A stretch of DNA of 64,000 nt from Phallusia mammillata (Eukaryota), in contig OZ281497.1 of the NCBI GenBank assembly GCA_965637545.1, positions 14,880,001 to 14,944,000 of the forward strand, given 5' to 3'. The notes under the pieces were generated by a model. It made no database searches and was not told where the DNA came from. It saw only the letters and a program-made list of their open reading frames with translations. The translations under genes were made by a program, and so were the position numbers. Below are positions 6,944 to 41,895 of this stretch, one piece after another (the stretch's first letter is position 1; each line of letters opens with the position of its first letter).

Positions 6944-8759
6944 CTGTTGGTAGGTAGAAAGTAACAATAAATCCTACACAATGCACTTTAAAAATTGCAG
7001 TAAAACTGCAACAGACCAGACAGCAAACACTTTATTCCAGACTACGACCTACTTGTTACTGTACTACTCATTACCATCGAATCGTGAGAAACTTAACTTT
7101 TCCCATCGAAGTTTATTTAAACCCTTAAAGTGATATGAATCAGTCGCCTATAAGAGCAATCGTTGACACCGCAAAATTACCCCCAAACTGTATCTGAAGT
7201 ACGGATAAAGAACACGATTGTAACTAGTCCGTCTGTCCGAGCAATTCTTCCAACCCTCAATCTTCCAACAACGAATGCATGGACACATAAATATTTTAAA
7301 CGTTCGCAACCGAAAATTTCATTGATGGTCCTTGGCCATGTTTCTGCATACATCGTTACCTGTAAATCGTGATGCTGGTCCTACTAGCTTTAAACGCTGT
7401 ATTTTGAGACAATATCTCTTTCTTCGCAAAGCAGTGAAGTGGTTTTGACGCACAACTAACCGGTCATTTACTGAAGTTGAAACGAGCGGCGCTTCTTGCT
7501 ACTACGTTAGTTGACAAAGCACTTACTCAAAATCTCCACCCGCACTTGTGCCTGCAAAGTATTGCCGATTACTGCAATTTGCTACACTACAGACCTTGAG
7601 TTGAGCCCGAGGAGGGATTAAATTGGCGATTTGTAAACACCAACGTCGACTTGTGATTTGCAGTTCAAAACCTTAATATTGTTGGGGCGTAATTAAACCT
7701 CGCAGTAACAACAAACTTCTATACGATCAGCAAAAGAGGCAATTACTATGACAGAACTTCTTGTTTTGGTACACCAAAATGAGCAAGCAACTTTGAGGAC
7801 ACCAGCACAATGTGATGTACATGTTTACTGTCAACTTACCTACACCCTGACTTTCAGTATGGATGCTACTAAAGAACAGGATAGGTGCGAAACCAAAACC
7901 GCTAAACACATGAATCATCACATCTTGACAAACCACCGGTCATACACTCCAAACGCGTCGCGTCGCCCCCTGCTTTAACGAGAAACCAAAGCTGTTCCAT
8001 TGTGCTACTTTTCTTGTAGGGTGGCTTTAGCCGCGATAAGACGCGTTGAACGTTGCCTAAAATGAAACACGAATCGCCGATGTGCCACTGTACCAGGCCT
8101 TTTCGTTTTCTACGACCGTCGACGTCAGTACACAAACTTGCCTTCAATACTTGGCCGATAATAATATGCTGGCGTGTGGAGACATGGAGTTCGTACAATA
8201 TCCCAGTGACAGTCGATAACTCACAAATTTGCTTTTGGTAATACACATATAACCCACCCAAAGCCATTGTCATACATTCAGTCGTCGAGAGACTTTGGCA
8301 AACAATATACCTTACGATTATATGGATATTAATGTTGAATGAACTTGTTGAAATTTGTTGCCTTGGTTGTACTGCCTTACGTGATAAAATTTTATGTTTT
8401 GTGAACATTCAAGCAGTAAATTGCACAAAGTTGTTTGCCAGTTGTGCAGTAAAACACCTTATTTGGCGCTATATACTCCAATGGAGGTCGGGGTTTGACA
8501 ACTATCGCTTTCTCAAAGTGCCTGTCCTTACATTGGCTGTACAGTGTTTGATTTAAGGCCTGGGAAAGTTGTTTTGAGCGATTTTCCTGCTACATGCTCT
8601 GGAACAGCACTTTTACATTGTAATCTTTAAATCTCACTGTGGATGCGGTAAAATATTCATTATTTGATTGATTGTGCTAGTTCCATGTAAATAGTGTCAG
8701 CTTAACTTGTTTTGCAGCAAAGCCATAATTGCTTAACCTATTTGTTATGCATAATTTTT

Positions 8760-9335
8760 AGGTTCATTTAAAAAAGAGTAGGAAAGGCACTAAGTCCCCG
8801 CCCCTTTCAACTTGTTTTATTCAGCTTACTAATAATCCAGATTAGGCACAAGCAACCGAATTACCAGCAGTTGCACTAAGGTATAGCGGTATGTTGTTCA
8901 GAGTAATATCGATTGAGCCAAATTCTCAAATTCTACTAAATGAGGAAATGCGTTTTGGCCATAAAGAATGTAGTGAGTTCAAAGTTTTAAATTACCCTTA
9001 TAAGTATTTTAATGCAAAAACCTGTTACGCACCAAAAGAAAACCTATGAATAACAGATAAGAAACATTTATTTGAGGTCCAACCTCAACAACTTTTGCCC
9101 ACAGCTTAAATCGGCACATTAGGAAGATGCCAAAAAAGGCAACACGAGCAAAGCGCACAAAACGCAAAATACAGTGGAAAGAAAACGGATGTCGTAAAGG
9201 CAGAAATCGTACGTCTGTGTTTACTGCAATACAGCATCTGTACGCAACAAAAGTCCAGCGGAGTCCTCGCTTCGAGTCTCGCTGAAAAAAAACTGTTGGA
9301 AAGCAGCACCTAGCGGCAAGATCGGGTTTTAGTAC
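8760..9335 (-). repeat. Diverged copy of the NHL gene 3'UTR and 3' flank, lacking the coding exons
   Basis: Aligns to 9954-10540. It is near-identical over the first ~340 bp and visibly more diverged over about 9100-9310, with many substitutions and loss of ctgcctaataaatatgg. It ends at the last codon and stop (minus-strand TAC TAA). Confidence 0.85.
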
Positions 9336-10536
9336 CTAGCGGCAAGATCGGGTTTTTTATAGGGCACATATATGGTGATTAACTGAAAATTGTGGATTAT
9401 AATATATAGCTGTAGTTATTATAATCTATCATTGGTTCAAAACCCAATGATGTAATATTTTACTAGGTCAATGCATTTTGATCCAAAGGTTATTAAACGG
9501 ATTGCACCACAATATGAATCAGTCCACGTTACACCAGCCATACGTCAAATAGGGAAGTGTGAGGAGATACTAGAGTTTCGACCTACGAGTTTGGCCAAAA
9601 TTATAAACACGAAGTCATATTGCATTATATAAATCATATTGACTTGCATACGAAACCTGCAGAGTCTTGTGATCATACTGTTCAGAATTCCCGAAAATGA
9701 TTCCCCTTTCAGAAAAAGGAGAAAAAACCCCTAAAGAACGCATAAAGATTCACGCTTGTGTTAACAATTTTGTAGAACTGAAATCCCCTATAGGCAAAAA
9801 TAGGCTACCTATTCATTGACAGCTTGGCAAGATTTACGGTTAAATAAAATTTTCTTCCGAAAGAATTTACTAACCTGTCGATCTCACTGCAACAGACTTT
9901 GCGAATTTAAACATATTTCTGCCATGTTCTGCCGTGTTTTTTAAACATTTTCAGGTTCATTTAAAAAGATTAGGAAAGGCACTAAGTCCCCGCCCCTTTC
10001 AACCTGTTTTATTCAGCTTACTAATAATCCAGATTAGGCACAAGCAACCGAATTACCAGCAGTTGCACTATGGTATAGCGGTATGTTGTTCAGAGTAATA
10101 TCGATTGAGCCAAATTCTCAAATTCTACTAAATGAGGAAATGCGTTTTAGCCATAAAGAATGTAGTGAGTTCAAAGTTTTAAATTGCCCTTATAAGTATT
10201 TTAATGCAAAAACCTGTTACGCACCAAAAGAAAACCTATGAATAACAGAGAAGAAACATTTATTTGAGGTCCAACCTCAACAACCTTTGCCCACAAACCG
10301 GCACAGTAAGAAGATGTCGAAGAAAGCAACACGAGCAAAGAACGCCCAAAACGCAAAATACAGTGGAAAGAAAATGGATGTCGTAAGGCAGAAATCGTAC
10401 GTTTGTGTTTACTACAATACAGCTGCCTAATAAATATGGCATCTGTGCGCAACAAAAGTCCAGCGAAGTCCTCGCTTCGAGTCTCGCTGAAAAAAAAAAA
10501 CTGTTGGACAGCAGCACCTAGCGGCAAGATCGGGTT

Positions 10537-11858
10537 TTAGTACGTGAACACGTAAACAGCTGTTCCGCCAAAATTTGTCACTGACAAACGATAATCTTCG
10601 GTATTATCATGCCGGGATACTGACACAGAACAAGGTAAACGTATTGCGTGTTCAGGATCTGGAACGATGTGCCGCAGAAAGTTGCCCTCGCGATCGTAGA
10701 CGGAAACTCTATTGTTCCACATATCGGCAATCACAAGGTTGTTTTCGCAATCGACCGATATACCGTACGGAAGGTCAAGTTCTCCATCGCCTCCACCTTT
10801 TGTGCCAAAGGATCGCACAAGTTCGTTTTCTTCGTCAAAAATCTAGAAATAACGTAGAAATACCAGTTACGTAACAATTTCTTAAGCATACAAAAGGTTG
10901 CGTAAAAACGAAATAGACCAGAAAAGACCGGCCCGACTTGCAACTCTACATGGTTCTTATTTATCATTGCCACATGACACTCACAAAGACTGCCTTTCTA
11001 GTTTGCCGACTTTTTTGGATTCTTATTCCTCTGTTGAAGGCAGTGATGCACTAATTACCCGCCTTAAAAGTTTCGGGCCGAAACCGAATATTCAGATAAT
11101 TTCGGCCGAATCTGGCCGAACCTAAAATCGCCTTTCTGGAGGATGTTTTTATTTAAACCTTGTGTTGTTGTTGTTGCAGGTGAACTCATTTACGAAACTC
11201 CAAACCACTTTTACGATACGTAAACTGAAAAACACATTGTTTTTGCAGACAACGTGACTCGTGTTTTTTATGGAAACTATAGATGCGAGAGTTAGGTTAA
11301 TTTATGATGCTTCAAATTGGCGATATTGAAAGTTCGTGCTCTAATTTCAGATACCAAAAAAGTTCGGTATCGGCCAAATTAAAAAAAAACTCTGGCCTAA
11401 ATCGAAACTTTGGCATTACAGAATATACAGCCAAAATGTTTCGGCCAACCGCAACTTCGGCGCATTTAGTAGTTTTGAAAGCATTGTTTTGTGCATTCAT
11501 AAGCAATGACAGAATACTTTAGTTCAAGTATGAAAGCTATTACAATCGTCAAGCGTCGCTGTCTTAGGATGCAAGGCACACTGTTCCGACTTGTGCAGCG
11601 ACAAACTGAAAACTTATGAGACAAAATTGCTTGAAACACAGGATCAATGAAACCACGAAAATTAACAATTAAAGGTAAAATAGAATATTTTTCCTACCGA
11701 TATCCTGTCTTTCCAGTCAACGACAATTATATTGTCATCACTGTCAACGGTGACGCCCACTGGACAATCAAAATCTCCGGTCAGTTTGGATATTTGTTGA
11801 CCATTCGGTGATATAATTTTTACAGCGTTGTTATCAGTATCCGTTACTATGATTTCAC
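10537..11858 (-). CDS. Duplicated terminal exon pair of the NHL gene (distal copy): exons 11858-11698 and 10842-10537
   Basis: Same splice sites (ttttacag|GT...TCG|gtagga; ttctag|ATT...TAC TAA) and the same encoded peptide as 17792-17632 and 16776-16471. Whether it is expressed is unknown. Confidence 0.75.
11041..11471. mobile_element. Possible degenerate hAT-type non-autonomous element in the NHL last intron (also present at +2967 and +5934)
   Basis: Begins cagtgatgca. There are clusters of CCGAA/TTCGG subterminal motifs at 11073-11121 and 11364-11460, and it ends ttcggcgcatttagta, which only weakly mirrors the left end. No clean TSD. Confidence 0.4.
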
Positions 11859-13503
11859 CTGTAAAAGATCAGTTGTTAGTTAAAAAATGTTTTCTGTGCA
11901 AATACAAAACGGCATGACAGTCCGTAATTCCAGGTGGTCAACCGTCAACCATTCACTAGGCCTATAACGTTGCTTAAGTTCACGAATCACATTAGATGAG
12001 GTGTTCTTAACGCGTTGTGATTGCAGACAATCAAGCCCACCTAATCACGCATTTCGTGATGTAACTGTTGGCGCTTGTCACACGGTATTTGAACAACATT
12101 TTTGAAATTGAAACCACAACGGAATCACAGATTGCGACAACCAAAACGGTGTAACTGTGACCCAAAATTTGAAAACCTCTGAAATCAAAATGATCCAGAA
12201 CGGCAACTGCTATATGGAACATGTCCCAAACTGCCCTTTTGAGTACAACATTTTTTACGTGATACACAGAAAGCTTTATCCAACTTTCCAAACAAACATG
12301 TAATAATTTGTAATGAAAGAATTTATAGGGCGCATATATGGTGATTAACTGAAAATTGTGGATTATAATATATAGCTGTAGTTATTATAATCTATCATTG
12401 GTTCAAAACCCAATGATGTAATATTTTACTAGGTCAATGCATTTTGATCCAAAGGTTATTAAACGGATTGCACCACAATATGAATCAGTCCACGTTACAC
12501 CAGCCATACGTCAAATAGGGAAGTGTGAGGAGATACTAGAGTTTCGACCTACGAGTTTGGCCAAAATTATAAACACAAAGTCATATTGCATTATATAAAT
12601 CATATTGACTTGCATACGAAACCTGCAGAGTCTTGTGATCATACTGTTCAGAATTCCCGAAAATGATTCCCCTTTCAGAAAAAGGAGAAAACCCCCCTAA
12701 AGAACGCATATAGATTCACGCTTGTGTTAACAATTTTGTAGAACTGAAATCCCCTATAGGCAAAAATAGGCTACCTATTCAGTGACAGCTTGGCAAGATT
12801 TACGGTTAAATAAAATTTTCTTCCGAAAGAATTTACTAACCTGTCGATCTCACTGCAACAGACTTTGCGAATTTAAACATATTTCTGCCATGTTCTGCCG
12901 TGTTTTTTAAACATTTTCAGGTTCATTTAAAAAAGATTAGGAAAGGCACTAAGTCCCCGCCCCTTTCAACCTGTTTTATTCAGCTTACTAATAATCCAGA
13001 TTAGGCACAAGCAACCGAATTACCAGCAGTTGCACTATGGTATAGCGGTATGTTGTTCAGAGTAATATCGATTGAGCCAAATTCTCAAATTCTACTAAAT
13101 GAGGAAATGCGTTTTAGCCATAAAGAATGTAGTGAGTTCAAAGTTTTAAATTACCCTTATAAGTATTTTAATGCAAAAACCTGTTACGCACCAAAAGAAA
13201 ACCTATGAATAACAGAGAAGAAACATTTATTTGAGGTCCAACCTCAACAACCTTTGCCCACAAACCGGCACAGTAAGAAGATGTCGAAGAAAGCAACACG
13301 AGCAAAGAACGCCCAAAACGCAAAATACAGTGGAAAGAAAATGGATGTCGTAAGGCAGAAATCGTACGTTTGTGTTTACTACAATACAGCTGCCTAATAA
13401 ATATGGCATCTGTGCGCAACAAAAGTCCAGCGAAGTCCTCGCTTCGAGTCTCGCTGAAAAAAACAAACTGTTGGACAGCAGCACCTAGCGGCAAGATCGG
13501 GTT

Positions 13504-14825
13504 TTAGTACGTGAACACGTAAACAGCTGTTCCGCCAAAATTTGTCACTGACAAACGATAATCTTCGGTATTATCATGCCGGGATACTGACACAGAACAA
13601 GGTAAACGTATTGCGTGTTCAGGATCTGGAACGATGTGCCGCAGAAAGTTGCCCTCGCGATCGTAGACGGAAACTCTATTGTTCCACATATCGGCAATCA
13701 CAAGGTTGTTTTCGCAATCGACCGATATACCGTACGGAAGGTCAAGTTCTCCATCGCCTCCACCTTTTGTGCCAAAGGATCGCACAAGTTCGTTTTCTTC
13801 GTCAAAAATCTAGAAATAACGTAGAAATACCAGTTACGTGACAATTTCTTAAGCATACAAAAAGTTGCGTAAAAACGAAATAGACCAGAAAAGACCGGCC
13901 CGACTTGCAACTCTACATGGTTCTTATTTATCATTGCCACATGACACTCACAAAGACTGCCTTTCTAGTTTGCCGACTTTTTTGGATTCTTATTCCTCTG
14001 TTGAAGGCAGTGATGCACTAATTACCCGCCTTAAAAGTTTCGGGCCGAAACCGAATATTCAGATAATTTCGGCCGAATCTGGCCGAACCTAAAATCGCCT
14101 TTCTGGAGGATGTTTTTATTCAAACCTTGTGTTGTTGTTGTTGCAGGTAAACTCATTTACGAAACTCCAAAACACTTTTACGATACGTAAACTGAAAAAC
14201 ACATTGTTTTTGCAGACAACGTGACTCGTGTTTTTTATGGAAACTATAGATGCGAGAGTTAGGTTAATTTATGATGCTTCAAATTGGCGATATTGAAAGT
14301 TCGTGCTCTAATTTCAGATACCAAAAAAGTTCGGTATCGGCCAAATTAAAAAAAAACTCTGGCCTAAATCGAAACTTTGGCATTACAGAATATACAGCCA
14401 AAATGTTTCGGCCAACCGCAACTTCGGCGCATTTAGTAGTTTTGAAAGCATTGTTTTGTGCATTCATAAGCAATGACAGAATACTTTAGTTCAAGTATGA
14501 AAGCTATTACAATCGTCAAGCGTCGCTGTCTTAGGATGCAAGGCACACTGTTCCGACTTGTGCAGCGACAAACTGAAAACTTATGAGACAAAATTGCTTG
14601 AAACACAGGATCAATGAAACCACGAAAATTAACAATTAAAGGTAAAATAGAATATTTTTCCTACCGATATCCTGTCTTTCCAGTCAACGACAATTATATT
14701 GTCATCACTGTCAACGGTGACGCCCACTGGACAATCAAAATCTCCGGTCAGTTTGGATATTTGTTGACCATTCGGTGATATAATTTTTACAGCGTTGTTA
14801 TCAGTATCCGTTACTATGATTTCAC
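13504..14825 (-). CDS. Duplicated terminal exon pair of the NHL gene (middle copy): exons 14825-14665 and 13809-13504
   Basis: Intact splice sites and an identical peptide to the gene-proximal copy. Confidence 0.75.
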
Positions 14826-16470
14826 CTGTAAAAGATCAGTTGTTAGTTAAAAAATGTTTTCTGTGCAAATACAAAACGGCATGACAGTCCGTAATTCCAG
14901 GTGGTCAACCGTCAACCATTCACTAGGCCTATAACGTTGCTTAAGTTCACGAATCACATTAGATGAGGTGTTCTTAACGCGTTGTGATTGCAGACAATCA
15001 AGCCCACCTAATCACGCATTTCGTGATGTAACTGTTGGCGCTTGTCACACGGTATTTGAACAACATTTTTGAAATTGAAACCACAACGGAATCACAGATT
15101 GCGACAACCAAAACGGTGTAACTGTGACCCAAAATTTGAAAACCTCTGAAATCAAAATGATCCAGAACGGCAACTGCTATATGGAACATGTCCCAAACTG
15201 CCCTTTTGAGTACAACATTTTTTACGTGATACACAGAAAGCTTTATCCAACTTTCCAAACAAACATGTAATAATTTGTAATGAAAGAATTTATAGGGCGC
15301 ATATATGGTGATTAACTGAAAATTGTGGATTATAATATATAGCTGTAGTTATTATAATCTATCATTGGTTCAAAACCCAATGATGTAATATTTTACTAGG
15401 TCAATGCATTTTGATCCAAAGGTTATTAAACGGATTGCACCACAATATGAATCAGTCCACGTTACACCAGCCATACGTCAAATAGGGAAGTGTGAGGAGA
15501 TACTAGAGTTTCGACCTACGAGTTTGGCCAAAATTATAAACACAAAGTCATATTGCATTATATAAATCATATTGACTTGCATACGAAACCTGCAGAGTCT
15601 TGTGATCATACTGTTCAGAATTCCCGAAAATGATTCCCCTTTCAGAAAAAGGAGAAAACCCCCCTAAAGAACGCATATAGATTCACGCTTGTGTTAACAA
15701 TTTTGTAGAACTGAAATCCCCTATAGGCAAAAATAGGCTACCTATTCAGTGACAGCTTGGCAAGATTTACGGTTAAATAAAATTTTCTTCCGAAAGAATT
15801 TACTAACCTGTCGATCTCACTGCAACAGACTTTGCGAATTTAAACATATTTCTGCCATGTTCTGCCGTGTTTTTTAAACATTTTCAGGTTCATTTAAAAA
15901 AGATTAGGAAAGGCACTAAGTCCCCGCCCCTTTCAACCTGTTTTATTCAGCTTACTAATAATCCAGATTAGGCACAAGCAACCGAATTACCAGCAGTTGC
16001 ACTATGGTATAGCGGTATGTTGTTCAGAGTAATATCGATTGAGCCAAATTCTCAAATTCTACTAAATGAGGAAATGCGTTTTAGCCATAAAGAATGTAGT
16101 GAGTTCAAAGTTTTAAATTACCCTTATAAGTATTTTAATGCAAAAACCTGTTACGCACCAAAAGAAAACCTATGAATAACAGAGAAGAAACATTTATTTG
16201 AGGTCCAACCTCAACAACCTTTGCCCACAAACCGGCACAGTAAGAAGATGTCGAAGAAAGCAACACGAGCAAAGAACGCCCAAAACGCAAAATACAGTGG
16301 AAAGAAAATGGATGTCGTAAGGCAGAAATCGTACGTTTGTGTTTACTACAATACAGCTGCCTAATAAATATGGCATCTGTGCGCAACAAAAGTCCAGCGA
16401 AGTCCTCGCTTCGAGTCTCGCTGAAAAAAACAAACTGTTGGACAGCAGCACCTAGCGGCAAGATCGGGTT

Positions 16471-19400
16471 TTAGTACGTGAACACGTAAACAGCTGTTCC
16501 GCCAAAATTTGTCACTGACAAACGATAATCTTCGGTATTATCATGCCGGGATACTGACACAGAACAAGGTAAACGTATTGCGTGTTCAGGATCTGGAACG
16601 ATGTGCCGCAGAAAGTTGCCCTCGCGATCGTAGACGGAAACTCTATTGTTCCACATATCGGCAATCACAAGGTTGTTTTCGCAATCGACCGATATACCGT
16701 ACGGAAGGTCAAGTTCTCCATCGCCTCCACCTTTTGTGCCAAAGGATCGCACAAGTTCGTTTTCTTCGTCAAAAATCTAGAAATAACGTAGAAATACCAG
16801 TTACGTGACAATTTCTTAAGCATACAAAAAGTTGCGTAAAAACGAAATAGACCAGAAAAGACCGGCCCGACTTGCAACTCTACATGGTTCTTATTTATCA
16901 TTGCCACATGACACTCACAAAGACTGCCTTTCTAGTTTGCCGACTTTTTTGGATTCTTATTCCTCTGTTGAAGGCAGTGATGCACTAATTACCCGCCTTA
17001 AAAGTTTCGGGCCGAAACCGAATATTCAGATAATTTCGGCCGAATCTGGCCGAACCTAAAATCGCCTTTCTGGAGGATGTTTTTATTCAAACCTTGTGTT
17101 GTTGTTGTTGCAGGTAAACTCATTTACGAAACTCCAAAACACTTTTACGATACGTAAACTGAAAAACACATTGTTTTTGCAGACAACGTGACTCGTGTTT
17201 TTTATGGAAACTATAGATGCGAGAGTTAGGTTAATTTATGATGCTTCAAATTGGCGATATTGAAAGTTCGTGCTCTAATTTCAGATACCAAAAAAGTTCG
17301 GTATCGGCCAAATTAAAAAAAAACTCTGGCCTAAATCGAAACTTTGGCATTACAGAATATACAGCCAAAATGTTTCGGCCAACCGCAACTTCGGCGCATT
17401 TAGTAGTTTTGAAAGCATTGTTTTGTGCATTCATAAGCAATGACAGAATACTTTAGTTCAAGTATGAAAGCTATCACAATCGTCAAGCGTCGCTGTCTTA
17501 GGATGCAAGGCACACTGTTCCGACTTGTGCAGCGACAAACTGAAAACTTATGAGACAAAATTGCTTGAAACACAGGATCAATGAAACCACGAAAATTAAC
17601 AATTAAAGGTAAAATAGAATATTTTTCCTACCGATATCCTGTCTTTCCAGTCAACGACAATTATATTGTCATCACTGTCAACGGTGACGCCCACTGGACA
17701 ATCAAAATCTCCGGTCAGTTTGGATATTTGTTGACCATTCGGTGATATAATTTTTACAGCGTTGTTATCAGTATCCGTTACTATGATTTCACCTGTAAAA
17801 GATCAGTTGTTAGTTAAAAAATGTTTTCTGTGCAAATACAAAACGGCATGACAGTCCGTAATTCCAGGTGGTCAACCGTCAACCATTCACTAGGCCTATA
17901 ACGTTGCTTAAGTTCACGAATCACATTAGATGAGGTGTTCTTAACGCGTTGTGATTGCAGACAATCAAGCCCACCTAATCACGCATTTCGTGATGTAACT
18001 GTTGGCGCTTGTCACGCGGTATTTGAACAACATTTTCGAAAAACCACAACGGAATCACCGATTGCGACAACCAAAACGGTGTAACTGAGACCCAAAATTT
18101 GAAAACCTCTGAAATCAAAATGATCCAGAACGGCAACTGCTATATGGAACATGTCCCAAACTGCCCTTTTGAGTACAACATTTTTTACGTGATACACAGA
18201 AAGCTTTATCCAACTTTCCAAACAAACATGTAATAATTTGTAATGAAAGGATTTATAGGGCGCATATATGGTGATTAACTGAAAATTGTGGATTATAATA
18301 TATAGCTGTAGTTATTATAATCTATCATTGGTTCAAAACCCAATGATGTAATATTATACTAGGTCAATGCATTTTGATCCAAAGGTTATTAAACGGATTG
18401 CACCACAATATGAATCAGTCCACGTTACACCAGCCATACGTCAAATAGGGAAGTGTAAGGAGATACTAGAGTTTCGACCTACGAGTTTGGCCAAAATTAT
18501 AAACACGAAGTCATATTGCATTATATAAATCATATTGACTTGCATACGAAACCTGCAGAGTCTTGTGATCATACTGTTCAGAATTCCCGAAAATGATTCC
18601 CCTTTCAGAAAAAGGAGAAAAACCCCCTAAAGAACGCGTATAGATTCACGCTTGTGTTAACAATTTTGTAGAACTGAAATCCCCTATAGGCAAAAATAGG
18701 CTACCTATTCATTGACAGCTTGGCAAGATTTACGGTTAAATAAAATTTTCTTACTAAAGAATTTACTAACCTGTCGATCTCACTGCAACAGACTTTGCGA
18801 ATTTAAACATATTTCTGCCGTGTTCATTCAGAAGTTTGCCCTCCTTCGACCAAACTGTCACACATGAGCCGCAGGCGATCACAATGTTTCCTTCCGGTGT
18901 TTCGCACATCTGTGGAGTCGCATAATAGCAAATGTTTACAAATGTTTACAAATGTTATGTTTTGGACGAAGGTTGTTTGCTGCAAGTTAGGAGATTCATA
19001 TGAAGCGCTTTTGCAGCTATCGGGAGCATAACTTGTGAAAACATGGTTAAGCACACAGTCTTTATCGAGTCACAAATTCACCTTGACACTTAAAGGCCAC
19101 TTCAGCGTGTAACACACGCATTTGGATATCATGCCCATATGTATATATATATATATAGTCTCATTTAAAGACATGCGTATAAAGTTTTTCAATGACGTTT
19201 CGTCGAATTCTTTCATAGTGAATAGGAAAGGCGAGGTTAAATCAATTGACATTTGTAATTTGTTTGCCAAGCAAAAGTACCAAGCCAGCTTGCGTAATAT
19301 GTTACGCATGTGGTAGTTTTAAATGGCAAAAATACACAGAACTGCCTCGTTATCAATGTGACGTAATTTACACAGGATACGTAAAACCCGGCAAATTAGG

Positions 19401-21712
19401 TATATGGTATTAGAATTATCGTGGAAAACGTGAGATCAATGTGTAATTACTTAACTGATGACTTAACTTGACGTCACACGATTAGTGTTTGCACAAATGT
19501 CAAACACTTTTAAAAGCAACAAAAGATCATGAAACAAACGAAGTTTTCGCTATTGTTGACCATTCTTGAAAAGCTATGTCAAGAATGTGTGCAAATTTCC
19601 TATAACCTATCAAAACGTTGTTTGGGTGAAAAGCCTTTTATTGATATCGTTAAAAATGATTTTTTTCGGTTACACCCTTACACTGTTATGGCGCAACTGA
19701 AGAAACGTGATTTCGAAATCAATAAATTGTTTAAAGAGAAACTAGTTTCACCTGGTAAGGCTCAAAGGGTTTGCCTGCCTTTGTCGTTCTGGTGTGGAAA
19801 GATTTGACGAGTACTCCATTGCGGTCGTAAGTCTGTATAATTCGCTCTTCTTTGGCTGTAATCACCGACACATAACACAAACCTGACTTGCCCAGGTGTG
19901 TCCCAAACACAAGACCACCAGTGGGTAGCTTTCTGTTAAAAAGTCATATTAAACAAAGGAACTATTTAAAAATGGTATAGATTATAGAACTTACTTTACA
20001 CTTTTCGGCATGAGCCACGTTTTGACACTTGGTCCTGCTGGTGGGACCATGCGCTTCTGCCTAAACACACAAAAACAGCCTTCAGCTTCACGTATGTTAA
20101 CTGCTTAGCGTTTAATATCTGTGCACAATCGTTTTTCCTTAAAAATCAATACAACGTAGCGTCAACAACAGCAGCCTTACAACCGTTCAAAACCCTTTAC
20201 CTCCTTGACGCGACGAACATCTCGTTGTGTATGGCAATTCCCATGGCACTTAAAAACGCTACAAAAACCATTGCCCAAGCAAAATCAGTCGTTTTCACAA
20301 GTATACTCACGGGGAATTAGATTTCTTCTTGTGACTGCTGTTGGTGTATGGCGGGCTGTTCACGTACTCGCTGATGGTGTTGTTGGCGTTCACGTCTACC
20401 GAGTGAATACTGCACACGAGGCTGTCAAAAGCGCCACCACAGTTTAGCGAAGTGTCAACTGACGAGTTGCGTTTTGACCTGGCAACAAACACGTCTAGGT
20501 GTGAATGGCCGCCAAGAAAAGCTATATCTGCGAACGTTCGCCAGAAGTGTGAGAAAGGAAACGCGTGGGGAATAAAGTGACAGCCCCACTGTTCAAACAC
20601 ACGTTGTGCAATCGATGAATCTACTTGCAAACAGAGGTGTGCCGCGACAAAGACTATAAATTACCACAGGAGCTGACTTGTGACAACCTGTACAGTGTAT
20701 ATTCCACGATCCTATGTCACGAAATTTTGTTGACAAACATTCGTAGAAAGCGCGTGCCTGGTATCACCATGCTAGAATACATGCAAACTTTTTGCGTACA
20801 CCAGCTGTGAGTTAAACACGATCCACATTTACACCGTTTTACTTTCCACAACAAATACTCGAGTCATTCGGGGGCGTTTTCTCCGATTTAGTGCTATTTC
20901 GTACCGCTAATGACTAATTTCCTAAACTGAATTTGGCCGCTATAGTTCAAGCCTCGGGCAAAATGTCTCGACACATTTGTTTAAAACAACTCATAACAGA
21001 ACAAACATTAATACGTATTTTTGTAACTTTGCGACAATTACGACAAAACCAATGAGTTTAGCCGATACAGCAAGATCGGTGATGTACAATATAAGCTTTA
21101 GTTGTGTTACTCCAGATAATGAAAGTTACAATACACATCCAGACAAGCTTTTGCAAACGCTTGTTGGATTGATAGTTAGTCCACCAGTAAGTATTAACAA
21201 ACACCGCTGGACGCAGGCAATAAGCCCACAACACGAACCATTGTTCCATTTCCGTATCATACCACTCTGGAAGGGATTGCTTTCCCAAAAAGGTGGGCGA
21301 TTTTAAAGGCTGAATTAAGGTTTCCAATAGACTGCGGGAACGTGGTCTATAGGTACGAAGTAGGTTAAAAACACTGAAATCTTACAAAGGAACTTTTCAT
21401 GATCAACAGAAGCCATTTGATAAACAAGCGCTCAATGAAAAGAACAATGTATAACCTTACACGTTTTAGATGGCATACGTTGTTTTGCTTTAATTAACTT
21501 ACTTTGAGCCTTTACCAAACGTGCTGGTTCTTGTGGGGGAAGTCTGCTCACCAAATGGAGACCCAGATGAGTTTGACGAATTCGACAGGCTGTCAGCCGG
21601 GTTTACTTTTAAATATTGTGACCCAACAAACATTGAATAAGGCCTTGGGCTCTGCAAGTTCGGTGAGCGCCGTTTGCTAGGCAAAGGTGAACGTCTTCCG
21701 TTCATAATTCCA
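16471..21712 (-). CDS. NHL-repeat six-bladed beta-propeller protein (TRIM2/3/Brat-like C-terminus); 5' end unresolved
   Basis: Phase-consistent exons 21712-21503, 20478-20311, 20060-19995, 19932-19752, 18909-18771, 17792-17632, 16776-16471. They encode a Ser/Pro-rich linker followed by NHL repeats: EPYQMCETPEGNIVIACG, FAKSVAVRSTGEIIVTDTDNNAVKI, CPVGVTVDSDDNIIVVDWKDRISIFD, LPYGISVDCENNLVIADMWNNRVSVYDREG, ending VYVFTY*. Confidence 0.88.
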
Positions 21713-24402
21713 CTTTTGTTTAAAATGCAATTCGCCCAAATCAGTAAATCTGTCAACTTTATGACTAAACACTTTAACTAGTAAAACATAAACACAAATT
21801 GACAAGAGACCAAAGGTAAAATAATAAAAGTACTGCCATTTCCTCATCAGCACATGAACAACTTTCGTAAGTTAACTATAACACCGTCACTAACCAAAGC
21901 TAAACAAATACTTGGTTGACATAAGACTGGAAGTGTCGCCTATGAAAGTACTGCAATTTCCTCGCAAAACATGGACAAATCTGTGAGTCAACGCCTACAT
22001 GGAGTGTATATATAACTGATGCAAATCCTTGTTCAGTCAAACACATGTGAGTTATATTGCTACGCAGCGCAACATGCGTCAGGCCTTGATTTGTTGTCTT
22101 GACGTGGGTGCAGTATTTCTTGCCTTATAAGCATGAACGTGTGCCATTGTTTCCCAAAACTGAAGGCAACAGAACGACATGTCTATCGAGCGGTCGCAAG
22201 TTTGATCGGGAAACACATTTACGCCATAGTAGTTTCGATGAAGCAAAATAGGGGTCGGCTATTCACAAAAACTGACGTTAATCTACGCATTTGGTGAAAG
22301 TTTCTAACATTACATTGCCTGAAAGGATTGCCCAGATTCCTACCATGTCGTTCCACATCGTCTAACGTGTTTAGACAAAATGTCGATCACTATGACCAAC
22401 ACCCATTTTTAAAAATGTGTCTTGGTTATTATCCATAAACGTTTTGGCTTTTTAAATGAGACTTAATGTTGTCCTGAGAGAGGAGCAAACTGGATTTTTA
22501 TTGTTTAGAAATACTTTTAAAATAAGTTATATTAACTGCGCATTAATGAAAACAAATTGTGGAAAAAGTCGTCACTTTACAAACACACAAACCGACATAT
22601 AGTTTTTGATTGTGTTAACTAAAACACCGAAAATACGATTAACAACAGTATTACCGTGCAACGTGTACTTTTTCTGTAACATACACTAACTCCTCGAAAA
22701 ACTACAAAACCGAACATACATCGAAAAATACGACTGTGGATACTTTTGTTGTCAAGTTTAAGCTTTGCGTGGCCTCCCTGTGATATGGCATTGCAGTTGC
22801 CACTAACTTTGATTAAGAAACGCAACGATAACTTCAGGCTGCTGAAGAATATGTATCTCAGTGAATAGAACGGATTGCACGAGCACGCCATACCAGTTCC
22901 TGTTTCCTGACGCTCATTGAATGACTGAATCATGTATACCCTGCGAAAGACGCGGCGCGATGCGAAACGTGCTGGTCTCATTTCTTTAGTTTGAGGTTAT
23001 CATTTACCGCAGGCCAGTGCACGCTGTTTAATTGGTGCGCGATATTCTGCGGCTAAAACGTGCCTTGCAGCATTGGGTAGCTCCGCCTCCGCGCACAAAA
23101 GGGTCGTCTCTGCCTCAACTTGACTGATTGTTTAAAATCCGATACGGAACGACAGGTGTATCGCAAACATTCGGCTGCACTACTGGTCTCAAACCTGACA
23201 TTCCTTTTTGCGGCCGTAAAATACAGAAACACACAACACAAAAGACTGGCCACAAGAGTAAAACCTTAAATAGCGATAATCTGGGTTTTGACTTAATGTC
23301 AAATTTGCGATTGGTTATGGAATTACCAACGTATGTCTGGCAGGTATCCGGACAAATACTGAACCACAGAAAACTCTGGCCCACGGCGGAAAAGTAACAA
23401 CGTCACAGGCGAACGTTCGAAACAGACTTGTTTAAAACAACAACAACTTATTCTAATTTAAAACGACTTGATCTTTGGAATATTTATTCGATACAAGTCG
23501 ACAAGGTTCACCGGCGTGCAAACCTTCACCGCATTATCAGACAAGCGCAACAGTTATAAGAAAGTGTTAGTTTATAATAACCACACAAATAGAAAGCATT
23601 GTTACAAAAAAAAAACAATAATCATAAATGTTATTTGAAGAAACATTAACTTACCGGCAGTTCCAGAACGTCGCAAAGCTACATGTACCAATCCGGAAGC
23701 CAGCCCACTATTTCATACACAGCGGCCCTATCAAAGTTTGAAGACACCTATTATAAACAAAGTAAAGTACTGAAATACTTAGACGGTAGTTAACAGCCTG
23801 ATGGATAACATGCATGATATGACTTCCTTGTAAGCACGGTTGCCATATCGCAACCAAGAGCAATTAACATACAGTAGTTAAAACACTGTGTAAACAGTTT
23901 TACTGCTACTGTTTAGAGGGGGCAACTAGACAATGGAACATCTACACCAGTTGATTCTTACCCTCGTAGTTGAACAGTTTTCTCCAGTACACGGTACTTT
24001 AACAACAAACAACACGAAAATTAACACCGGTACGCTCGACGGAATGATTGTGTCAAAACGCTACTGTAATAAAAGGTCAATTGTAGAGAGACCTTTTAAC
24101 TCGTCAGAGGATCAGTGAAGCTTGTAGACTGCTGTAAAACTACATTGTGTTGCCACAAAAGGCAAAGCCCGGACTAAAACCCCATAAACACGCTGTTTTT
24201 TTAATTCAATGTAAATTATTGATGAATACAACGTGCTACCTGACACTTTTTCTCCGGTGGGCAGGCAATATTCTATAATTATTCGCATCTTATCTACACG
24301 CGAATTTATCTTACAGAGAATATTAAAATAAAATAACTGTTTACCAAGTATGCTTACACACAAGGTTGACACGATAGGTCAATTTCAGGCTGCGACTCGA
24401 AG

Positions 24403-25340: not shown

Positions 25341-27029
25341 CTAGTTGCCAATGTAACTAACCATCACAAACTAGAGTTTCAAAACTATCCCAAATGACAG
25401 GTCTAAATGTCGGTGCGTGAGGATAAAGTTTTTGTAAAAAGGAAATATGTTGTCTGGTATAGTTAATACCTGATTTTAATCAACGAATCTTGTTTGTTAA
25501 ACCGAACTTGGCCACGACCTTTTCTGTTCGGCAACAATTTTCTAATCTTCTCTTACCACCCACAACAAAACAACAACCTCATACGCAGTTACATATAGAT
25601 TTGCACCCTTTGTTGAGTATTTGCGATAAAACGCTTTTGCGACATCGTCGAAGTATGACGCAAGCGCACAAAAGCGATCCAATAAATAAAAGGGAATAAA
25701 ATTAAAGTACACTCCAAAATAGATTTCTTCGGTGGGCGCTTAAACACATATAAGGACAGCAGAAACAATAATTATGAAATCACAATACAACGAAGTTAAG
25801 TTTCCTATACCCTAATGGCAAAACAAAGAAGTCAACAATTCGGCTTAGATTTGCAGCTGTAGCAAAAACATCGAGATTTAGCATTCAAACCACGTACATT
25901 TGTCAAGGGTAAATGGCTAATCAACCGTAATTTAGTCCATCAGTAAGACAAGAATACAAAAGTGCCTGTACATAACTGAATAAACAGACGGTGTTGATAA
26001 TTAAATATCGGAAGCAGAGTAAACTATTTTGGTTAGAGGTAAGTTCGTTTTTTTACTGTGAAGGTATATATATGTTGTCAAGCAGCTAAACGTACTTTTA
26101 GCTTTACAATTAAATTAGACTAATTTGTATCAGCAACAAGGCCAAGTCCGGTTGTGAGAGCCAAACGAAGACACAGTGAACAGCCTTGTACGTTGTGACA
26201 ATTGTCATTTTCTCGACTCTTTGTGCCCACCTTTAAACCAAATGTTGGGTTTTTAATATGTTCGAGTGTGACTTATTCAGATTGCATTGGTAGTGCGAGA
26301 AGAATACCAGGATGCTAAATAGAAAAGCAAGTGTTATCGTAAAAGATTGTTATTGTTCCGCTGTTTGTGTTTTTGTCAACCGACTGGTCGCTGCGTTTTG
26401 GCCCAAATGACCACGCGGTAAGCGCGTTTAAGCTTGCTATGAAGCTGCGCAGTGGGAGAATGGATTAAAACAAGAAGAAAAACATAAAACTGGCTGACAG
26501 AATCAAAAGAGTTAATTTAAAACGAAAAAATGAAATAATAAAGTATATGACGCCTCCATATATGGAGCCACCTCTTTGTGCATGCAAAATAAATAAAACT
26601 TCGTGGGTCCGTTAGTGGAGATAAGAAGAACATCAAGAAAAACAACGACGAAAAACAGATCGTTGAAACTTAACAAAACGGGCTTAAAACTCGCGTTTAG
26701 TGCGACCAAGCATGATGAGATCGCCGCATCATTTGTTTCAAGTTATCAGAAAACCATGATACGGCGGTGATTTTCCGATTGTAAGAGCAACACACTGTTG
26801 CGGTTTACACTAATGTGTACATGAAAGAAATCAAGTCGGTTCAATACTTATGAGCGGCACACGATCACTGCATTGCAAAGGGTTAGAAAGATAACCGGAT
26901 AGCGATCAGAAATTTCCTAAAACGTCTTTGCGCAGTCGCTGACGACATCCACGTCACGACCACGGGTTCAAAGCCAGTTGCGTCAATACCCTCTCGCCCG
27001 GGGCGCATGTTTATTGGCCAGACCGACAA

Positions 27030-30000
27030 TTACCGAATACGCGTGAACAAATTAAGCACAGATGTAGAGTCTTTGTTCGACGGCGTCTTCGAGAAAACGT
27101 TCCAGAACCGCAGGGTTTCGTCGCCAGCGCCCGTCACAATTGCTTCACCGTCGGGTGATGTGGCCTGTAAAGTCAATTCATTTTATGGCCTTGTAAAACA
27201 TGTAGACCTCACAGTAGGGTGTCCCAAGCCGAATGCATTTTACAATATGCTGCAGGTTGGTATTTGCGATGATTACATTTTATGTCCACAGCCTGTATAC
27301 TTTATTTTGACCCACAACCACACCAGGCCTATTCTCTAATAACATATCGTGCGGTGTGGCACTCAAGATTAGTGACATAATGTCCAACCACCAGTACAAA
27401 AAAAGTTTACTTAAAGACTTACAATTTACTTTAAAGGTTATAGAATGCAAGCTTGTTCACTCTTGAAACGACACAACTGTGTCAAGTTCATTATATTTTT
27501 TTGAAAAGGTTAGCAATATATACGCATTTCCTAAATATATGAAAGGGTGGATAGGACACTGTACTGTTGTCCAATCGGGTTCTACTGTATTGAAGCAACA
27601 ACGTTTTAAAGGGGGACAATTCACCCTATACCAGTTATTCTCACTCATTTAAAAGAGACACATATTGCATACATTACTAGCTTATCAATGATTTGCCGTG
27701 AACCACACGTTTTCAAAATTCGCTTACCAGGTAGAGAACACGGTAGGAGTGCCCGGTGAGCTTAGCAACTTGCGTGAGCGAAGGATATTTCCAGAGGAGG
27801 ATTTGGTTCTGGCTGTATCCGTGAGTCGACACCAACTCACTGGCGTGTTTTGACCAAGCAAGGTTACAAACTTGAGAGCCGGTGTCCACGCACTGGAGGG
27901 GTTGCTGGGTTAGAGTGTTCCAGAAACGAATGCATCTGTATTAATGTTAACAAATAAGTATTTTATGGCGGGATTAGCGTAAGGGCATAGAAACATTGCG
28001 ACCAGTAACATAAGATAGGAAAAAGCAAGCAATCTGGTAGAAGCCAAATTCACTTTTAATTTGCAATTTTGGGACTGGATAGTTTTAATGGGCGCTCTGT
28101 TTTTTTGGCTTTGGGCAAACAACACAAATACAAAAATTTAAGAGCTGTTCTTGTTTTTCAATATCGCACGGTTGTTTCCTTCGCTTAATAACAGTTTCGT
28201 TACAAGTTCACGGTATCTTAAAACTGGTAAACAAGGGGGGAAACTTCCCAAACGAAGGCATGACGAAAATTGATGCCATGCCCAATTGTTTCGCTTTAAT
28301 TAGTTCCCTATAGATTGCAAGGGAAGCAATCACGTGGGGGACAATGCAATTGGCGATGGGCGTGAGAAATTTGCGAAGTTGCAACTATAAACTTTTATGA
28401 TGGAGGGAACCCGCCAAAACAAACCGCCAATTATTTACCGTTTCTTGCCCCGTAATGCGCGGTCGATCAAAGTCGAGTGAAAACAGTGGCCTTTGAAGAG
28501 AGAAGATCATTTTAATTGTTCACAGATGGCGAAAACAAATTAGATCTGAAGTATTGGGGTCATAGGTCACAGCACAATGCTTTTGCGAAACAACTTTTCG
28601 AGGTTAATATCGCACAATAGTGAAATTTAACCTGGTACAATGTTGAAGTTTGGGTAAGATTCATATTTTTCAATTAGGCCAAAACGTTATCTCGCCCATC
28701 CTTCTACCTTCACTGAACGCGTAATGTAAAACTAAGCCTGTCGTCAAAAACAAAACCTCCAATATTGAACTTCATGTTGACAATGACAAAAACAGCAAAA
28801 CAGGACATGCGAAACCATGATGCATCAACCACCATGGTCTGAACACAGATAACCATAAAATTACCTGTCTGCTGTGCCACCACCTGATGCGAGCAAACCA
28901 TGTTGGTGGGGAGACCAGGCTATCGCTTTGACCGCAGCCAGATGATCGCTGTACGTTTGTGCGGCTTGTTGTTGAAAAACTGACGAAGTGCTAGCGTTCC
29001 ACACCAGCAGCTTGTTATCGTTGCCACCTGATGCCAAATGTTGACGATCGGGCGACCACTTTAAGCCACACACCTGCGACAAGGAAACACATCGTAAGGT
29101 TGGCACTATTTCTAAACTAAAAGGAAAAATCCACCATAAATTTCTTCTCTTATCATCTACACAACAAACAAATATACGGGGTGCAGAATCTGCCCCTTTA
29201 GAACAGCATCAATGTGTGAACACGAGAAATGTGACTTAAATCTTTAAACTCTATTAATAACACTGCATAACGCAACAAAAACAATACAAATGTTATGTGT
29301 AGGCAAGTGGGTGCACGTTAATATAAAAACACACAAGTGCACACTTCACTTAAGAGCAAGATCCTTCATGAGTTAAATCCCACGCAACCGATCAGACACG
29401 CATATAACTTGCAAATCGTGATTCGCGTTGACAATTGTGACGTAACAAAGTTGTTCATCAATCGGCAGTGGCCAAATATATCCATGCGTCATACTACGTA
29501 ATCAATTGGTGGTCGACAGAAGGGATCATGCTAATGTATTCTAACATTGTTCGAAATCAAATACGCTGGTCAAACCCTTATTGATATGTGACAGCAGGAA
29601 CTTTGACGAAAAGATGAGATTAGATCACGTTGTGGACCACGACGCCATAGCTCATAAAGTATGTTAGAAGTATTTTTTGTGCTTTTAAATAACTGCCCCT
29701 GCTGTATGACAAATAAACGCGTTTTTACCTTATAAGGAAAGTCTTTATCACTAGAAAAGGACCAAGGTATGGCTGACAAACAACTTATAATAATGTGAAG
29801 TTCATTTTTATACTTTTCCTCACACAGTCGCCCAGCGGTGCGGTGAGAAAGAAACATATGGCCCACCCTGGAAAAACCTGAACGTGAGAGGAACACAAAA
29901 CCAACCTCTTGTTTGTGTCCAGCAAGCTTCCTGTCAGCGGTGTTTCCAGCAACAGCGGAGTAGGAGCGAATATCACGCTGCAAGATCGTTCGATCTCGGC

Positions 30001-39271: not shown

Positions 39272-39650
39272 TTTGCACAATGTGCGCCAAAATGTGCAGG
39301 TCGAAATGTGCGCACATTTTTCGAAAATGTGCAGGTGCCAAAATGTGCAGGGTAAAATGTGCGCACATTTTTCGAAAATGTGCAGGTGCCAAAATGTGCA
39401 GGTCAAAATGTGCAGGTGCCAAAATGTGCAGGTTAAAATATGCGCACATTTTTCGAAAATGTGCAGGTGCCAAAATGTGCAGGTCAAAATGTGCAGGTGC
39501 CAAAATGTGCAGGTCAAAATGTGCAGGTCAAAATGTGCAGGTGCCAAAATGTGCAGGTCAAAATGTGTAGGTTAAAATGTGCAGGTCAAAATGTGCAGGT
39601 CAAAATGTGCAGGTCAAAATGTGCAGGTCAAAATGTGCAGGTGCCAAAAT
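39272..39650 (+). repeat. Left TIR minisatellite array
   Basis: Units aaaatgtgcaggtc (14 bp), aaaatgtgcaggtgcc (16 bp) and aaaatgtgcgcacatttttcg (21 bp, containing an 18-bp palindrome). The 21-mers occur only in the outer half. Confidence 0.97.
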
Positions 39651-40019
39651 TTCTCCCTTTCATACTAAAAAAGTCTTTCTGTCCCTTTCACACAAACAAT
39701 TTTTTGTCCCAATTACATAATTATTATATATCTTTCCCTGCATTTTTATTTTAAATAGTGTTCTGTGCAAATCAATTAACTTATATAGGTATGTTATTTT
39801 TCTTGTTAAATGCAGTGGATTAAGTTTTTTAACTGAACAGAATATGACCCTTCAGGGCAAAAATAACTGAAAATACAATGTGGTTTCAAACAAATGCAGT
39901 GGTAAATAACTGATGCCTATATAAATGGTGAGAACTTATACTTTTGCATTGCACATCCATCATTTTTTTCATGACATCTCAGTATTATCCTTTTCTAAAC
40001 CCGTTTTGTTACCATTGTA

Positions 40020-41760: not shown

Positions 41761-41895
41761 CACAACATGCATTTTTACAAGTTTCTCTTAAATCCGATTT
41801 TAATTTATAGGTCATAACTTATAACTAATATTTTTGGCACAATTTATGACCACAACAATAGTTTGACGTTAAATATCAATACTTCATTTGAGCGA

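What the first reader, a model, noticed from the sequence alone, without database searches (positions are those of the whole stretch)
9358..18824. Tandem triplication of the last two exons of an NHL beta-propeller gene
Seen: each 2967-bp unit carries the 3' part of exon C with its donor, intact exons B and A (about blades 3-6 of the propeller), the stop codon, a 3'UTR with AATAAA (minus strand, e.g. about 10259-10264) and flank. Splice sites and peptides are identical in all three copies. Inference: this is partial-gene amplification caught in progress. It gives the gene three interchangeable terminal modules and poly(A) sites, which is raw material for mutually exclusive 3' ends or a copy-number polymorphism in a possibly immune- or RNA-binding TRIM-NHL-type gene.
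Basis: partly seen in the sequence, partly recalled or inferred. Interest (0 to 1): 0.7.

Follow-up and report, generated by a model that had tools for sequence, protein, structure and literature searches.

The report
Polymorphic tandem duplication of gene end
The last 3 kb of a sea-squirt gene for a small NHL-propeller protein is repeated head to tail about three times; the repeat is real, is seen in some animals and apparently not in others, and the extra copies sit behind the gene's normal end with no sign of use, so this is an ordinary young copy-number variant.

Summary
Window 9356-18825 is a tandem array with a period of 2963-2967 bp, 3.19 copies, 98.4-99.5% identical. Each unit carries the last 55 nt of exon C with its donor, exons B and A, the stop codon and the 3'UTR of a minus-strand, 7-exon, 388-codon NHL gene. 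The exons and their splice dinucleotides are identical in all copies.

The duplication is not an assembly invention. The unit-to-unit junction stands in contigs of two public DNA runs from two studies. A third run crosses the boundary in one unbranched contig without it. Contig depth over the repeat is about 2.2x, 1.2x and 1x the flank in the three runs. That pattern fits a copy-number polymorphism.

The third copy is less secure. It is a perfect 3302-bp repeat at lag 2967. That is the signature of one very recent unequal crossover in a two-unit array, or of an assembler looping once too often.

A spliced RNA contig joins C, B and A and ends about 16 nt past the AATAAA. No RNA contig crosses the junction.

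The gene is NHL-only. No B-box lies in the window, so the TRIM-NHL label is not supported.

The scan has described a very similar gene-end tandem variant elsewhere in this genome (s1-392419).

Verdict: a real, young, probably neutral variant of a known kind.

The parts
9356..18825 (.). Whole tandem array: 3.19 units with a period of 2963-2967 bp
15863..18825 (-). Proximal unit (copy 3), in gene phase: exon C 3' 55 nt, intron 1, exon B, intron 2, exon A, stop, 3'UTR and 17 bp. This is the copy contiguous with the rest of the gene
12896..15862 (-). Middle unit (copy 2). It is an exact chimera: its 5' part matches copy 1 and its 3' part matches copy 3
9930..12895 (-). Distal full unit (copy 1), with 14 private differences, three of them in the UTR (9962 indel, 10186, 10497)
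9356..9929 (-). Fourth, partial unit (copy 0): the exon C 3' fragment with its donor plus the first 519 nt of intron 1
9336..9355 (.). 20-bp filler at the truncation point. 18 of its bases re-copy 10520-10537 (the start of the UTR), a templated insertion
8754..9335 (-). Older copy of the 3'UTR (psi-UTR), 92% identical overall. About 2% diverged in the part far from the stop and about 10% in the 225 bp next to it. It keeps all three poly(A) hexamers
   Evidence: only 4 copies in the genome, all here
11206..17474 (.). Stretch with perfect 2967-bp periodicity: 11206-14507 equals 14173-17474 with 0 differences
18771..18909 (-). Exon C. The array boundary (18825/18826) lies inside it
   Evidence: RNA joints
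17632..17792 (-). Exon B of copy 3. Identical copies lie at 14665-14825 and 11698-11858. NHL repeat, Pfam E = 6.5e-9
16471..16776 (-). Exon A coding part with the stop, in copy 3. Identical copies lie at 13504-13809 and 10537-10842. NHL repeat
16177..16470 (-). Main 3'UTR as seen in RNA. AATAAA lies at 16193-16198 and the RNA contig ends at 16177. A weak RNA contig at 15926-16118 lies upstream of a second AATAAA at 15942-15947
15833..15897 (.). Unit-to-unit junction J (15862|15863; also 12895|12896 and 9929|9930). The motif TGCC[A/G]TGTT occurs on both sides of the joint
   Evidence: junction contigs in runs X1 and X3
19752..21736 (-). Single-copy upstream exons: G 21503-21736 (ATG at 21703-21705), F 20311-20421, E 19995-20060, D 19752-19932
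   Evidence: RNA contig joints; frame and GT-AG check; 5' sequence
16976..17257 (.). Old interspersed repeat inside intron 2 of every unit. It is not at the unit boundaries
   Evidence: 589 candidates genome-wide, 71-77% identity; depth spike

Best explanation
This is a real, young and polymorphic tandem segmental duplication (a copy-number variant) of the 3' end of an NHL-only propeller gene.

How it formed (inferred). A first event joined a point 17 bp past the 3'UTR homology to a point inside exon C. The short motif repeated at the joint points to a replication or repair template switch. The array then changed length by unequal crossing-over between units. The present middle unit is the exact chimera expected from one such crossover in intron 2 of a two-unit array. 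The distal-most copy lost exons B and A in a 1.8-kb deletion sealed with a templated 20-bp filler.

How it works now. Transcription starts upstream, splices C to B to A in the first (proximal) copy, and ends at that copy's poly(A) site. The extra copies are silent passengers behind the gene's end. Even if they were used, they would encode the same peptide.

Shown: the array, the identical exons, the junction in other samples, the spliced RNA and its 3' end. Inferred: the mechanism of origin, neutrality, and the exact copy number in any animal.
For: Junction evidence:
- The 18825->15863 'goes back 2963' joint stands in one contig each of X1 (depth 192.6 against 96 for the flank) and X3 (16 against 28.1). 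These are two studies, with 36 and 53 letters on the two sides of the joint.
- In X4 a single 10,238-nt contig runs unbranched from 16401 to beyond 21800, through both 18252 and 18825, and shows no junction.
- Repeat contigs against the flank contig: X1 216 vs 96, X3 32.3 vs 28.1, X4 the same contig.
- Many sites that differ between copies also differ between the runs (18356, 18457, 18622, 18638, 17088, 17116 and others). The copy differences are therefore ordinary population variants caught in the array.

Recombinant structure:
- The differences between neighbouring units are strongly clustered. All 7 events between units 3 and 2 lie in the last 781 columns, and all 14 between units 2 and 1 lie in the first 1851 columns. 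If they were spread evenly, p = 9e-5 and 1e-3.
- There is a 3302-bp exact tract at lag 2967.

Gene use:
- The gene model has GT-AG at all six introns and 388 codons.
- RNA contig 10 of X12 (depth 75) is spliced C-B-A and ends at 16177, 16 nt past the AATAAA. Only a depth-3.5 contig lies beyond it, and none lies on the junction.

Other points:
- The UTR segment is not a dispersed repeat: it has 4 copies, all local.
- The filler is templated.
- No Rfam family is found in the unit.
- Tandem arrays that vary in copy number are documented in Ciona (bioRxiv 10.64898/2026.10.01.755871).
Against: All runs were available only as contigs, so depth is one k-mer mean per contig. The tool itself warns that this is not a copy number and that contigs show presence, not absence.

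One of X1 and X3 may be the sample the assembly came from, which would leave one independent witness of the junction.

The junction alone proves only that the UTR end is joined to the exon-C fragment, which needs at least 1.19 units. It does not prove three units. The zero-difference third copy could be an assembler error.

The truncated distal end (copy 0 + filler + psi-UTR) was not seen as a branch in any of the three DNA runs. Contigs in X1, X3 and X4 run through 18252 and 16478 without a break, so that end may be private to the assembled haplotype or wrong.

In X3 the junction depth (0.57x) is lower than the unit depth (1.15-1.5x), which the reference structure alone does not predict.

The 8% divergence of psi-UTR, against about 1% for the neighbouring partial unit, is not explained by a single clock.
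Confidence: 0.7

Rival explanations
1. The duplication is real, but the assembly overstates it. The true haplotype has two units (2.19 copies), and the long-read assembler threaded one extra period through a near-identical array.
For: The extra period is letter-perfect. 11206-14507 equals 14173-17474, 3302 bp with 0 differences, while the outer units differ by about 0.7%. X1, the run closest to the window, has repeat contigs at only about 2.0-2.6x the flank. The same scaffold carries a 100% identical 2352-bp duplication on both sides of an N gap, so assembly artefacts do occur nearby.
Against: A single very recent unequal crossover gives exactly the same pattern. In X1 the contig holding the unit-3/unit-2 type of UTR start (16431 C) has depth 149 against 96 for the flank, about 1.5x. 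That fits one haplotype with two such copies plus one haplotype with one copy better than it fits one copy per haplotype (a noisy short contig). There is no gap or N in the array.
Confidence: 0.2
2. The extra copies are used. Read-through past the first poly(A) site lets the exon C donor pick exon B of copy 2 or copy 1, giving alternative 3' ends and UTRs. Alternatively, the downstream copies make a truncated propeller from the in-frame ATG inside the exon-C fragment or by trans-splicing onto exon B.
For: All splice sites and poly(A) hexamers are intact in every copy. Weak RNA contigs (depth 2-3.5) lie beyond the main poly(A) site and in intron 1. The exon-C fragment holds an in-frame ATG. Only 1 of about 30 copy differences falls in coding sequence, and it is synonymous.
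Against: The encoded peptides are identical, so there is nothing to choose between. No RNA contig crosses the junction. The main RNA contig ends at the first poly(A) site at 20 times the depth of anything beyond it. The exon-C fragment has no acceptor, only an A-rich tract before a junction-made AG. A 3.6-blade fragment cannot close a six-blade propeller (established knowledge of NHL propellers). The shortage of coding differences is not significant (about 4.5 expected, 1 seen, Poisson p about 0.06, my arithmetic), and it is expected if the differences are inherited polymorphisms.
Confidence: 0.04
3. Pure assembly artefact: the locus is single-copy and the 'copies' are two haplotypes or read errors laid in tandem.
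For: The differences between copies (0.3-1.6%) are in the range of allelic differences seen between runs. X4 looks single-copy.
Against: The junction sequence exists in contigs of two runs from two studies. Repeat contigs have higher depth than the flank in both, and the contigs break at 18790-18819 exactly where a tandem repeat must branch. The templated filler and the older psi-UTR are not things assemblers invent.
Confidence: 0.03

Closest known systems
Tandem segmental duplications and copy-number variants that grow by unequal crossing-over, for example the 23-copy CYP tandem repeat in Ciona intestinalis (bioRxiv 10.64898/2026.10.01.755871)
   Same: Head-to-tail kb-scale units, near-identical copies, copy number differing between animals, and a chimeric unit as a footprint of unequal exchange.
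   Different: Here the unit is not a whole gene. It holds only the last two and a bit exons plus the UTR, so no dosage change and no new gene results. The copy number is small (1 to 3).
The gene-end tandem duplication described earlier in this same genome (scan note s1-392419)
   Same: The last few kb of a gene repeated three to four times head to tail, young, not present in all animals, and with no sign of use.
   Different: A different gene (a membrane receptor) and a different unit length (4.6 kb). That note is unchecked by me.
Tandem exon duplication leading to mutually exclusive exons (Kondrashov and Koonin 2001; Letunic et al. 2002; recalled from my own knowledge, not read here)
   Same: Internal duplication of exons with their splice sites.
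   Different: Those cases involve internal exons that have diverged and are spliced alternatively. Here the block contains the stop codon and poly(A) site, the copies are identical in protein, and RNA shows only one C-B-A path.
NHL beta-propellers of TRIM71/LIN-41, TRIM2/TRIM3, Thin and Brat
   Same: Exon A matches their NHL domains (PDB 8j72 E = 2e-40, 6d69 E = 1.4e-38, 7b96 E = 6e-31). Exon B matches the Pfam NHL repeat.
   Different: No RING, B-box or coiled coil. The protein is 388 residues, with a Ser/Pro-rich N-terminal tail and then the propeller.

Membership tests
Tandem segmental duplication / copy-number variant | Head-to-tail copies with a constant period and a novel junction | tested here: met
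   Spacings of 2966, 2967 and 2963 bp, with three identical junctions at 15862|3, 12895|6 and 9929|30.
Tandem segmental duplication / copy-number variant | The junction is present in DNA of samples other than the assembly | tested here: met
   Junction contigs in X1 and X3, from two studies. One of them may be the source sample.
Tandem segmental duplication / copy-number variant | Copy number differs between individuals | tested here: inconclusive
   Contig depth ratios are 2.25x, 1.15x and 1x. X4 has no junction and an unbranched contig. These are contig depths only; no raw reads or long reads were on hand.
NHL-repeat beta-propeller proteins (Pfam PF01436) | NHL repeats above the Pfam cut-off | tested here: met
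   Exon B scores 35.8 bits and exon A 20.8 bits against a cut-off of 20. Solved NHL domains are the best PDB matches.
NHL-repeat beta-propeller proteins (Pfam PF01436) | Six blades forming a closed propeller | not tested
Exons F to A sum to about 320 residues, the right size.
TRIM-NHL proteins | N-terminal RING, B-box and coiled coil before the NHL domain | tested here: not met
   The whole-genome B-box search has no hit in C4:14880001-14944000. The RNA contig starts 31 nt before the ATG at 21705, with an in-frame stop at 21778-21780. No Cys/His-rich ORF lies between 21800 and 27000.
Mutually exclusive / alternative 3' terminal exon sets | Transcripts that use one or another copy | tested here: inconclusive
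   One spliced RNA contig, compatible with copy 3 or copy 2, ends at the poly(A) site. No RNA lies on the junction. Contigs cannot exclude rare isoforms.
Mutually exclusive / alternative 3' terminal exon sets | The copies differ in the encoded protein | tested here: not met
   Exons B and A are letter-identical in all three copies.

The most novel reading that the evidence does not exclude
Tandem multiplication of gene 3' ends may be a recurrent mutation class in this sea-squirt genome. This locus and s1-392419 would be two instances of it, tied to something that happens where transcription ends, such as replication-transcription conflict or template switching at poly(A)-proximal sites. In that case the downstream copies could occasionally be reached by read-through and act as spare terminators or UTR variants.
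Probability: 0.07. Interest if true: 0.5.

Novelty: new member of a known kind. Interest (0 to 1): 0.25.

Why it matters
It matters little for the biology of the gene: the intact gene is unchanged and the extra copies add nothing to the protein. There are three practical uses.
- It is a clean, datable example of how a tandem array grows. The junction, the chimeric middle unit and a decayed last copy are all readable in one haplotype.
- It warns annotators that automatic gene models may string together or duplicate the last exons here.
- Together with a second gene-end array in the same genome, it hints that such variants are common in this very polymorphic animal, which could be counted genome-wide.

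Tried and rejected
- The whole-library protein search with exon A was swamped by giant multi-NHL bacterial proteins and gave no orthologue.
- The search for homologous proteins with exon A found a single 93-aa Logan fragment at 87% identity.
- I tested whether the 3'UTR / psi-UTR pair is a transposon. It is not: there are only four copies, all local.
- I tested whether an intronic RNA gene could be the reason for the amplification. Rfam has no hit at E <= 0.1 in 8000-22000.
- The interspersed repeat in intron 2 is not at the unit boundaries, so it did not mediate the duplication.
- The bacterial promoter/terminator scan at the junction is meaningless for an animal gene and should be ignored.
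- A paper search for Ciona plus TRIM-NHL found nothing.
- The joined seven-exon protein was neither searched nor folded, because it has no reference. Exons were searched one by one.
- I tried to derive exact haplotype structures for X1, X3 and X4 from contig depths. Several combinations fit, for example 3+1 units in X1, and I do not claim any of them.
- The species was not verified by me. 'Ciona / sea squirt' comes from earlier scan notes. The scaffold sizes seen (positions above 30 Mb, 240 Mb in total) look large for Ciona robusta.
Full report
**1. The observation**

Self-comparison of the window finds a tandem array at 9356-18825:
- 9356-15862 matches 12322-18825 at 99.49% over 6508 bp.
- 9356-12895 matches 15289-18825 at 99.07%.
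- 9356-9929 matches 18252-18825 at 98.4%.

Start-to-start spacings are 2966, 2967 and 2963 bp. That makes three full units and a 574-bp fourth piece, 3.19 copies. There is no N in it; the only N run of the window is 41956-42155.

**2. The gene**

A spliced RNA contig of run X12 (1493 nt, depth 75) lies on the minus strand with these blocks:
- 21736-21503
- 20421-20310
- 20059-19995
- 19932-19752
- 18909-18769
- 17790-17632
- 16776-16177

Where the tool says the cut can move, shifting it by 1-2 nt gives GT-AG at all six introns. From the ATG at 21705, seven exons sum to 1167 nt, which is 388 codons plus a stop. I checked the frames exon by exon and did not build or search a joined protein.

Upstream of the ATG there is an in-frame TAG at 21780-21778, inside a pyrimidine-rich '...ttttactag'.

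Exon B and exon A match the Pfam NHL repeat (35.8 and 20.8 bits against a cut-off of 20). The best solved relatives of exon A are the NHL domains of TRIM71, Thin, TRIM2/3 and Brat (E = 2e-40 to 1e-17).

A whole-genome scan for the B-box finds 13 hits, none in this window. No Cys/His-rich frame lies between the gene and the next gene upstream. So this is an NHL-only protein: a Ser/Pro-rich tail followed by a propeller-sized region of about 320 residues. It is not a TRIM.

**3. What a unit holds**

The array boundary at 18825/18826 lies inside exon C (18771-18909). Read in the direction of the gene, each unit contains:
- the last 55 nt of exon C with its GT donor
- intron 1
- exon B
- intron 2, which holds an old interspersed repeat with at least 589 candidate copies genome-wide
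- exon A with the stop codon
- about 600 nt of 3'UTR and downstream sequence with three poly(A) hexamers
- 17 further bases

Exons B and A are letter-identical in the three copies. The acceptors and donors are intact. The exon-C fragment differs at one synonymous site.

**4. Is it real?**

Only Logan contigs were on hand, with no raw reads. I laid four runs on a stretch holding exactly one unit plus the single-copy upstream flank (15863-21800).

- *Junction.* The unit-to-unit junction appears as a joint 18825->15863 ('goes back 2963') in one contig each of X1 and X3, which come from two studies. It has 36 and 53 letters on its two sides.
- *Branching.* In both runs the contigs break at 18790-18819, where a tandem repeat must branch.
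- *Depth.* Repeat contigs have a higher k-mer depth than the 17-18 kb flank contig: 216 vs 96 in X1 and 32.3 vs 28.1 in X3. The junction contig has 192.6 and 16.
- *X4.* One 10,238-nt contig runs unbranched from 16401 across 18252 and 18825 and on past 21800, with no junction.

The tool warns that contig depth is not a copy number and that contigs show presence, not absence. With that caveat, the simplest reading is that the duplication exists in some animals at different copy numbers and is missing in others.

Many of the sites that differ between copies also differ between runs (18356, 18457, 18622, 18638, 17088, 17116, 17475, 18016 and others). The copy differences are therefore ordinary population variants trapped in the array, not a clock.

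**5. How the array grew**

The differences between neighbouring units are not spread evenly. Units 3 and 2 differ only in alignment columns 2187-2966 (7 events). Units 2 and 1 differ only in columns 11-1851 (14 events). An even spread would give this with p about 9e-5 and 1e-3.

As a result, 11206-14507 equals 14173-17474 exactly: 3302 bp with 0 differences at lag 2967. In the direction of the gene, the middle unit has the 5' part of the distal unit and the 3' part of the proximal unit.

That is the product expected from one unequal crossover between the two units of a two-unit array. The exchange point lies in the 335 bp where the two types do not differ (14173-14507, in intron 2). It is equally what an assembler would produce by looping once too often. 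I cannot separate the two.

One weak pointer favours a real third copy. In X1 the short contig carrying the unit-3/unit-2 type of UTR start has about 1.5x the flank depth.

**6. The junction and the far end**

At the junction, the motif TGCC[A/G]TGTT stands on both sides of the joint. This suggests a template switch or another microhomology-guided repair event, not recombination between repeats. The only interspersed repeat in the unit lies far from the boundaries.

At the far end the array stops 519 nt into intron 1 (9356). A 20-bp filler follows, 18 bases of which re-copy the start of the UTR (10520-10537). After that comes a 582-bp copy of the UTR, running from about 4 nt before the stop codon onward (8754-9335).

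The UTR segment has only these four copies in the 240-Mb genome, so this is a decayed last unit, not a transposon. Its divergence from the array UTRs is uneven: 6 differences in the 300 bp far from the stop, against about 20 substitutions and 5 indels in the 225 bp next to it. The adjoining partial unit is about 1% diverged. Gene conversion, or recombination between old alleles, must have been at work. I cannot say which.

The truncated end is not visible as a branch in X1, X3 or X4. Their contigs pass 18252 and 16478 without a break. Contigs of all three runs carry the psi-UTR letter A at 16443; in X4 that letter is in the same contig as exon A, and in X1 and X3 it is in a short contig that overlaps the exon A contig. 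The truncation may therefore be private to the assembled haplotype. In other animals the last unit may be complete, with the psi-type UTR next to the flank. This remains open.

**7. Use of the copies**

The RNA contig ends at 16177, 16 nt past the AATAAA at 16198-16193. A contig of depth 3.5 covers 15926-16118, upstream of the second AATAAA at 15947-15942, which suggests a minor longer UTR. Nothing lies on the junction. The RNA carries C at 16431, the unit-3/unit-2 letter, not the unit-1 letter.

The exon-C fragment of the extra copies has no acceptor. Before the junction-made AG there is an A-rich tract. All copies encode the same peptide, so even a read-through transcript that picked a later exon B would make the same protein. 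No Rfam family is found in the unit. I conclude that the extra copies are silent passengers. Contigs cannot exclude rare isoforms.

**8. Comparison and novelty**

This is a tandem segmental duplication that varies in copy number. That kind is known, and is documented in Ciona for a whole P450 gene (bioRxiv 10.64898/2026.10.01.755871). The scan has already described a gene-end tandem array of the same style elsewhere in this genome (s1-392419; not checked by me).

It is not a case of mutually exclusive terminal exons, because the copies do not differ in protein. The gene is not a TRIM-NHL. The finding is a new member of a known kind, of modest interest.

**9. Limits**

- Read laying and the look-up of sequencing runs allow one call each, and both are used.
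- The species name rests on earlier notes, not on my own test.

Noticed in passing
window 39604-41955 and 42156-44507, around the N run 41956-42155: The 2352 bp on either side of the 200-N gap are 100% identical direct copies. This is the usual look of a false duplication made when a gap is scaffolded. It lies inside the element that another note (s1-399126) reads as a foldback transposon, so that element's size and symmetry may be partly an assembly product.
   Followed up: no
window 27000-32800, minus strand: The next gene upstream has WD40 exons that read like a CDC20/Cdh1 (Fizzy-related) activator of the anaphase-promoting complex, for example 29573-30157 and 27716-27940. This is recognised by eye only.
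   Followed up: no
window 16976-17257, with copies at 14009-14290 and 11042-11323: An old interspersed repeat of about 280 bp sits in intron 2. It has at least 589 candidate copies genome-wide at 71-77% identity and very high contig depth in all DNA runs.
   Followed up: partly
G000 contig C3, many places between 11.6 and 17.4 Mb: About 15 NHL-repeat hits share the same score (27.8 bits) and lie in open frames of 145-172 aa, on both strands. This looks like a multi-copy NHL-bearing gene or element family on one chromosome.
   Followed up: no
window 17404 and 20479: Contigs of X3 and X4 leave the reference at 17404 with the same 30 letters, and a contig of X1 leaves it at 20479 (loose ends). 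These are probably insertion/deletion polymorphisms in intron 2 and in the intron between exons G and F.
   Followed up: no
window 21122: All three DNA runs read T where the window has A. This is either a private variant or a base error of the assembly.
   Followed up: no
window 39286-39650 and 44448-44722: Minisatellites built on AAAATGTGCAGGT units stand in inverted orientation at the two ends of the 39.2-44.7 kb element.
   Followed up: no
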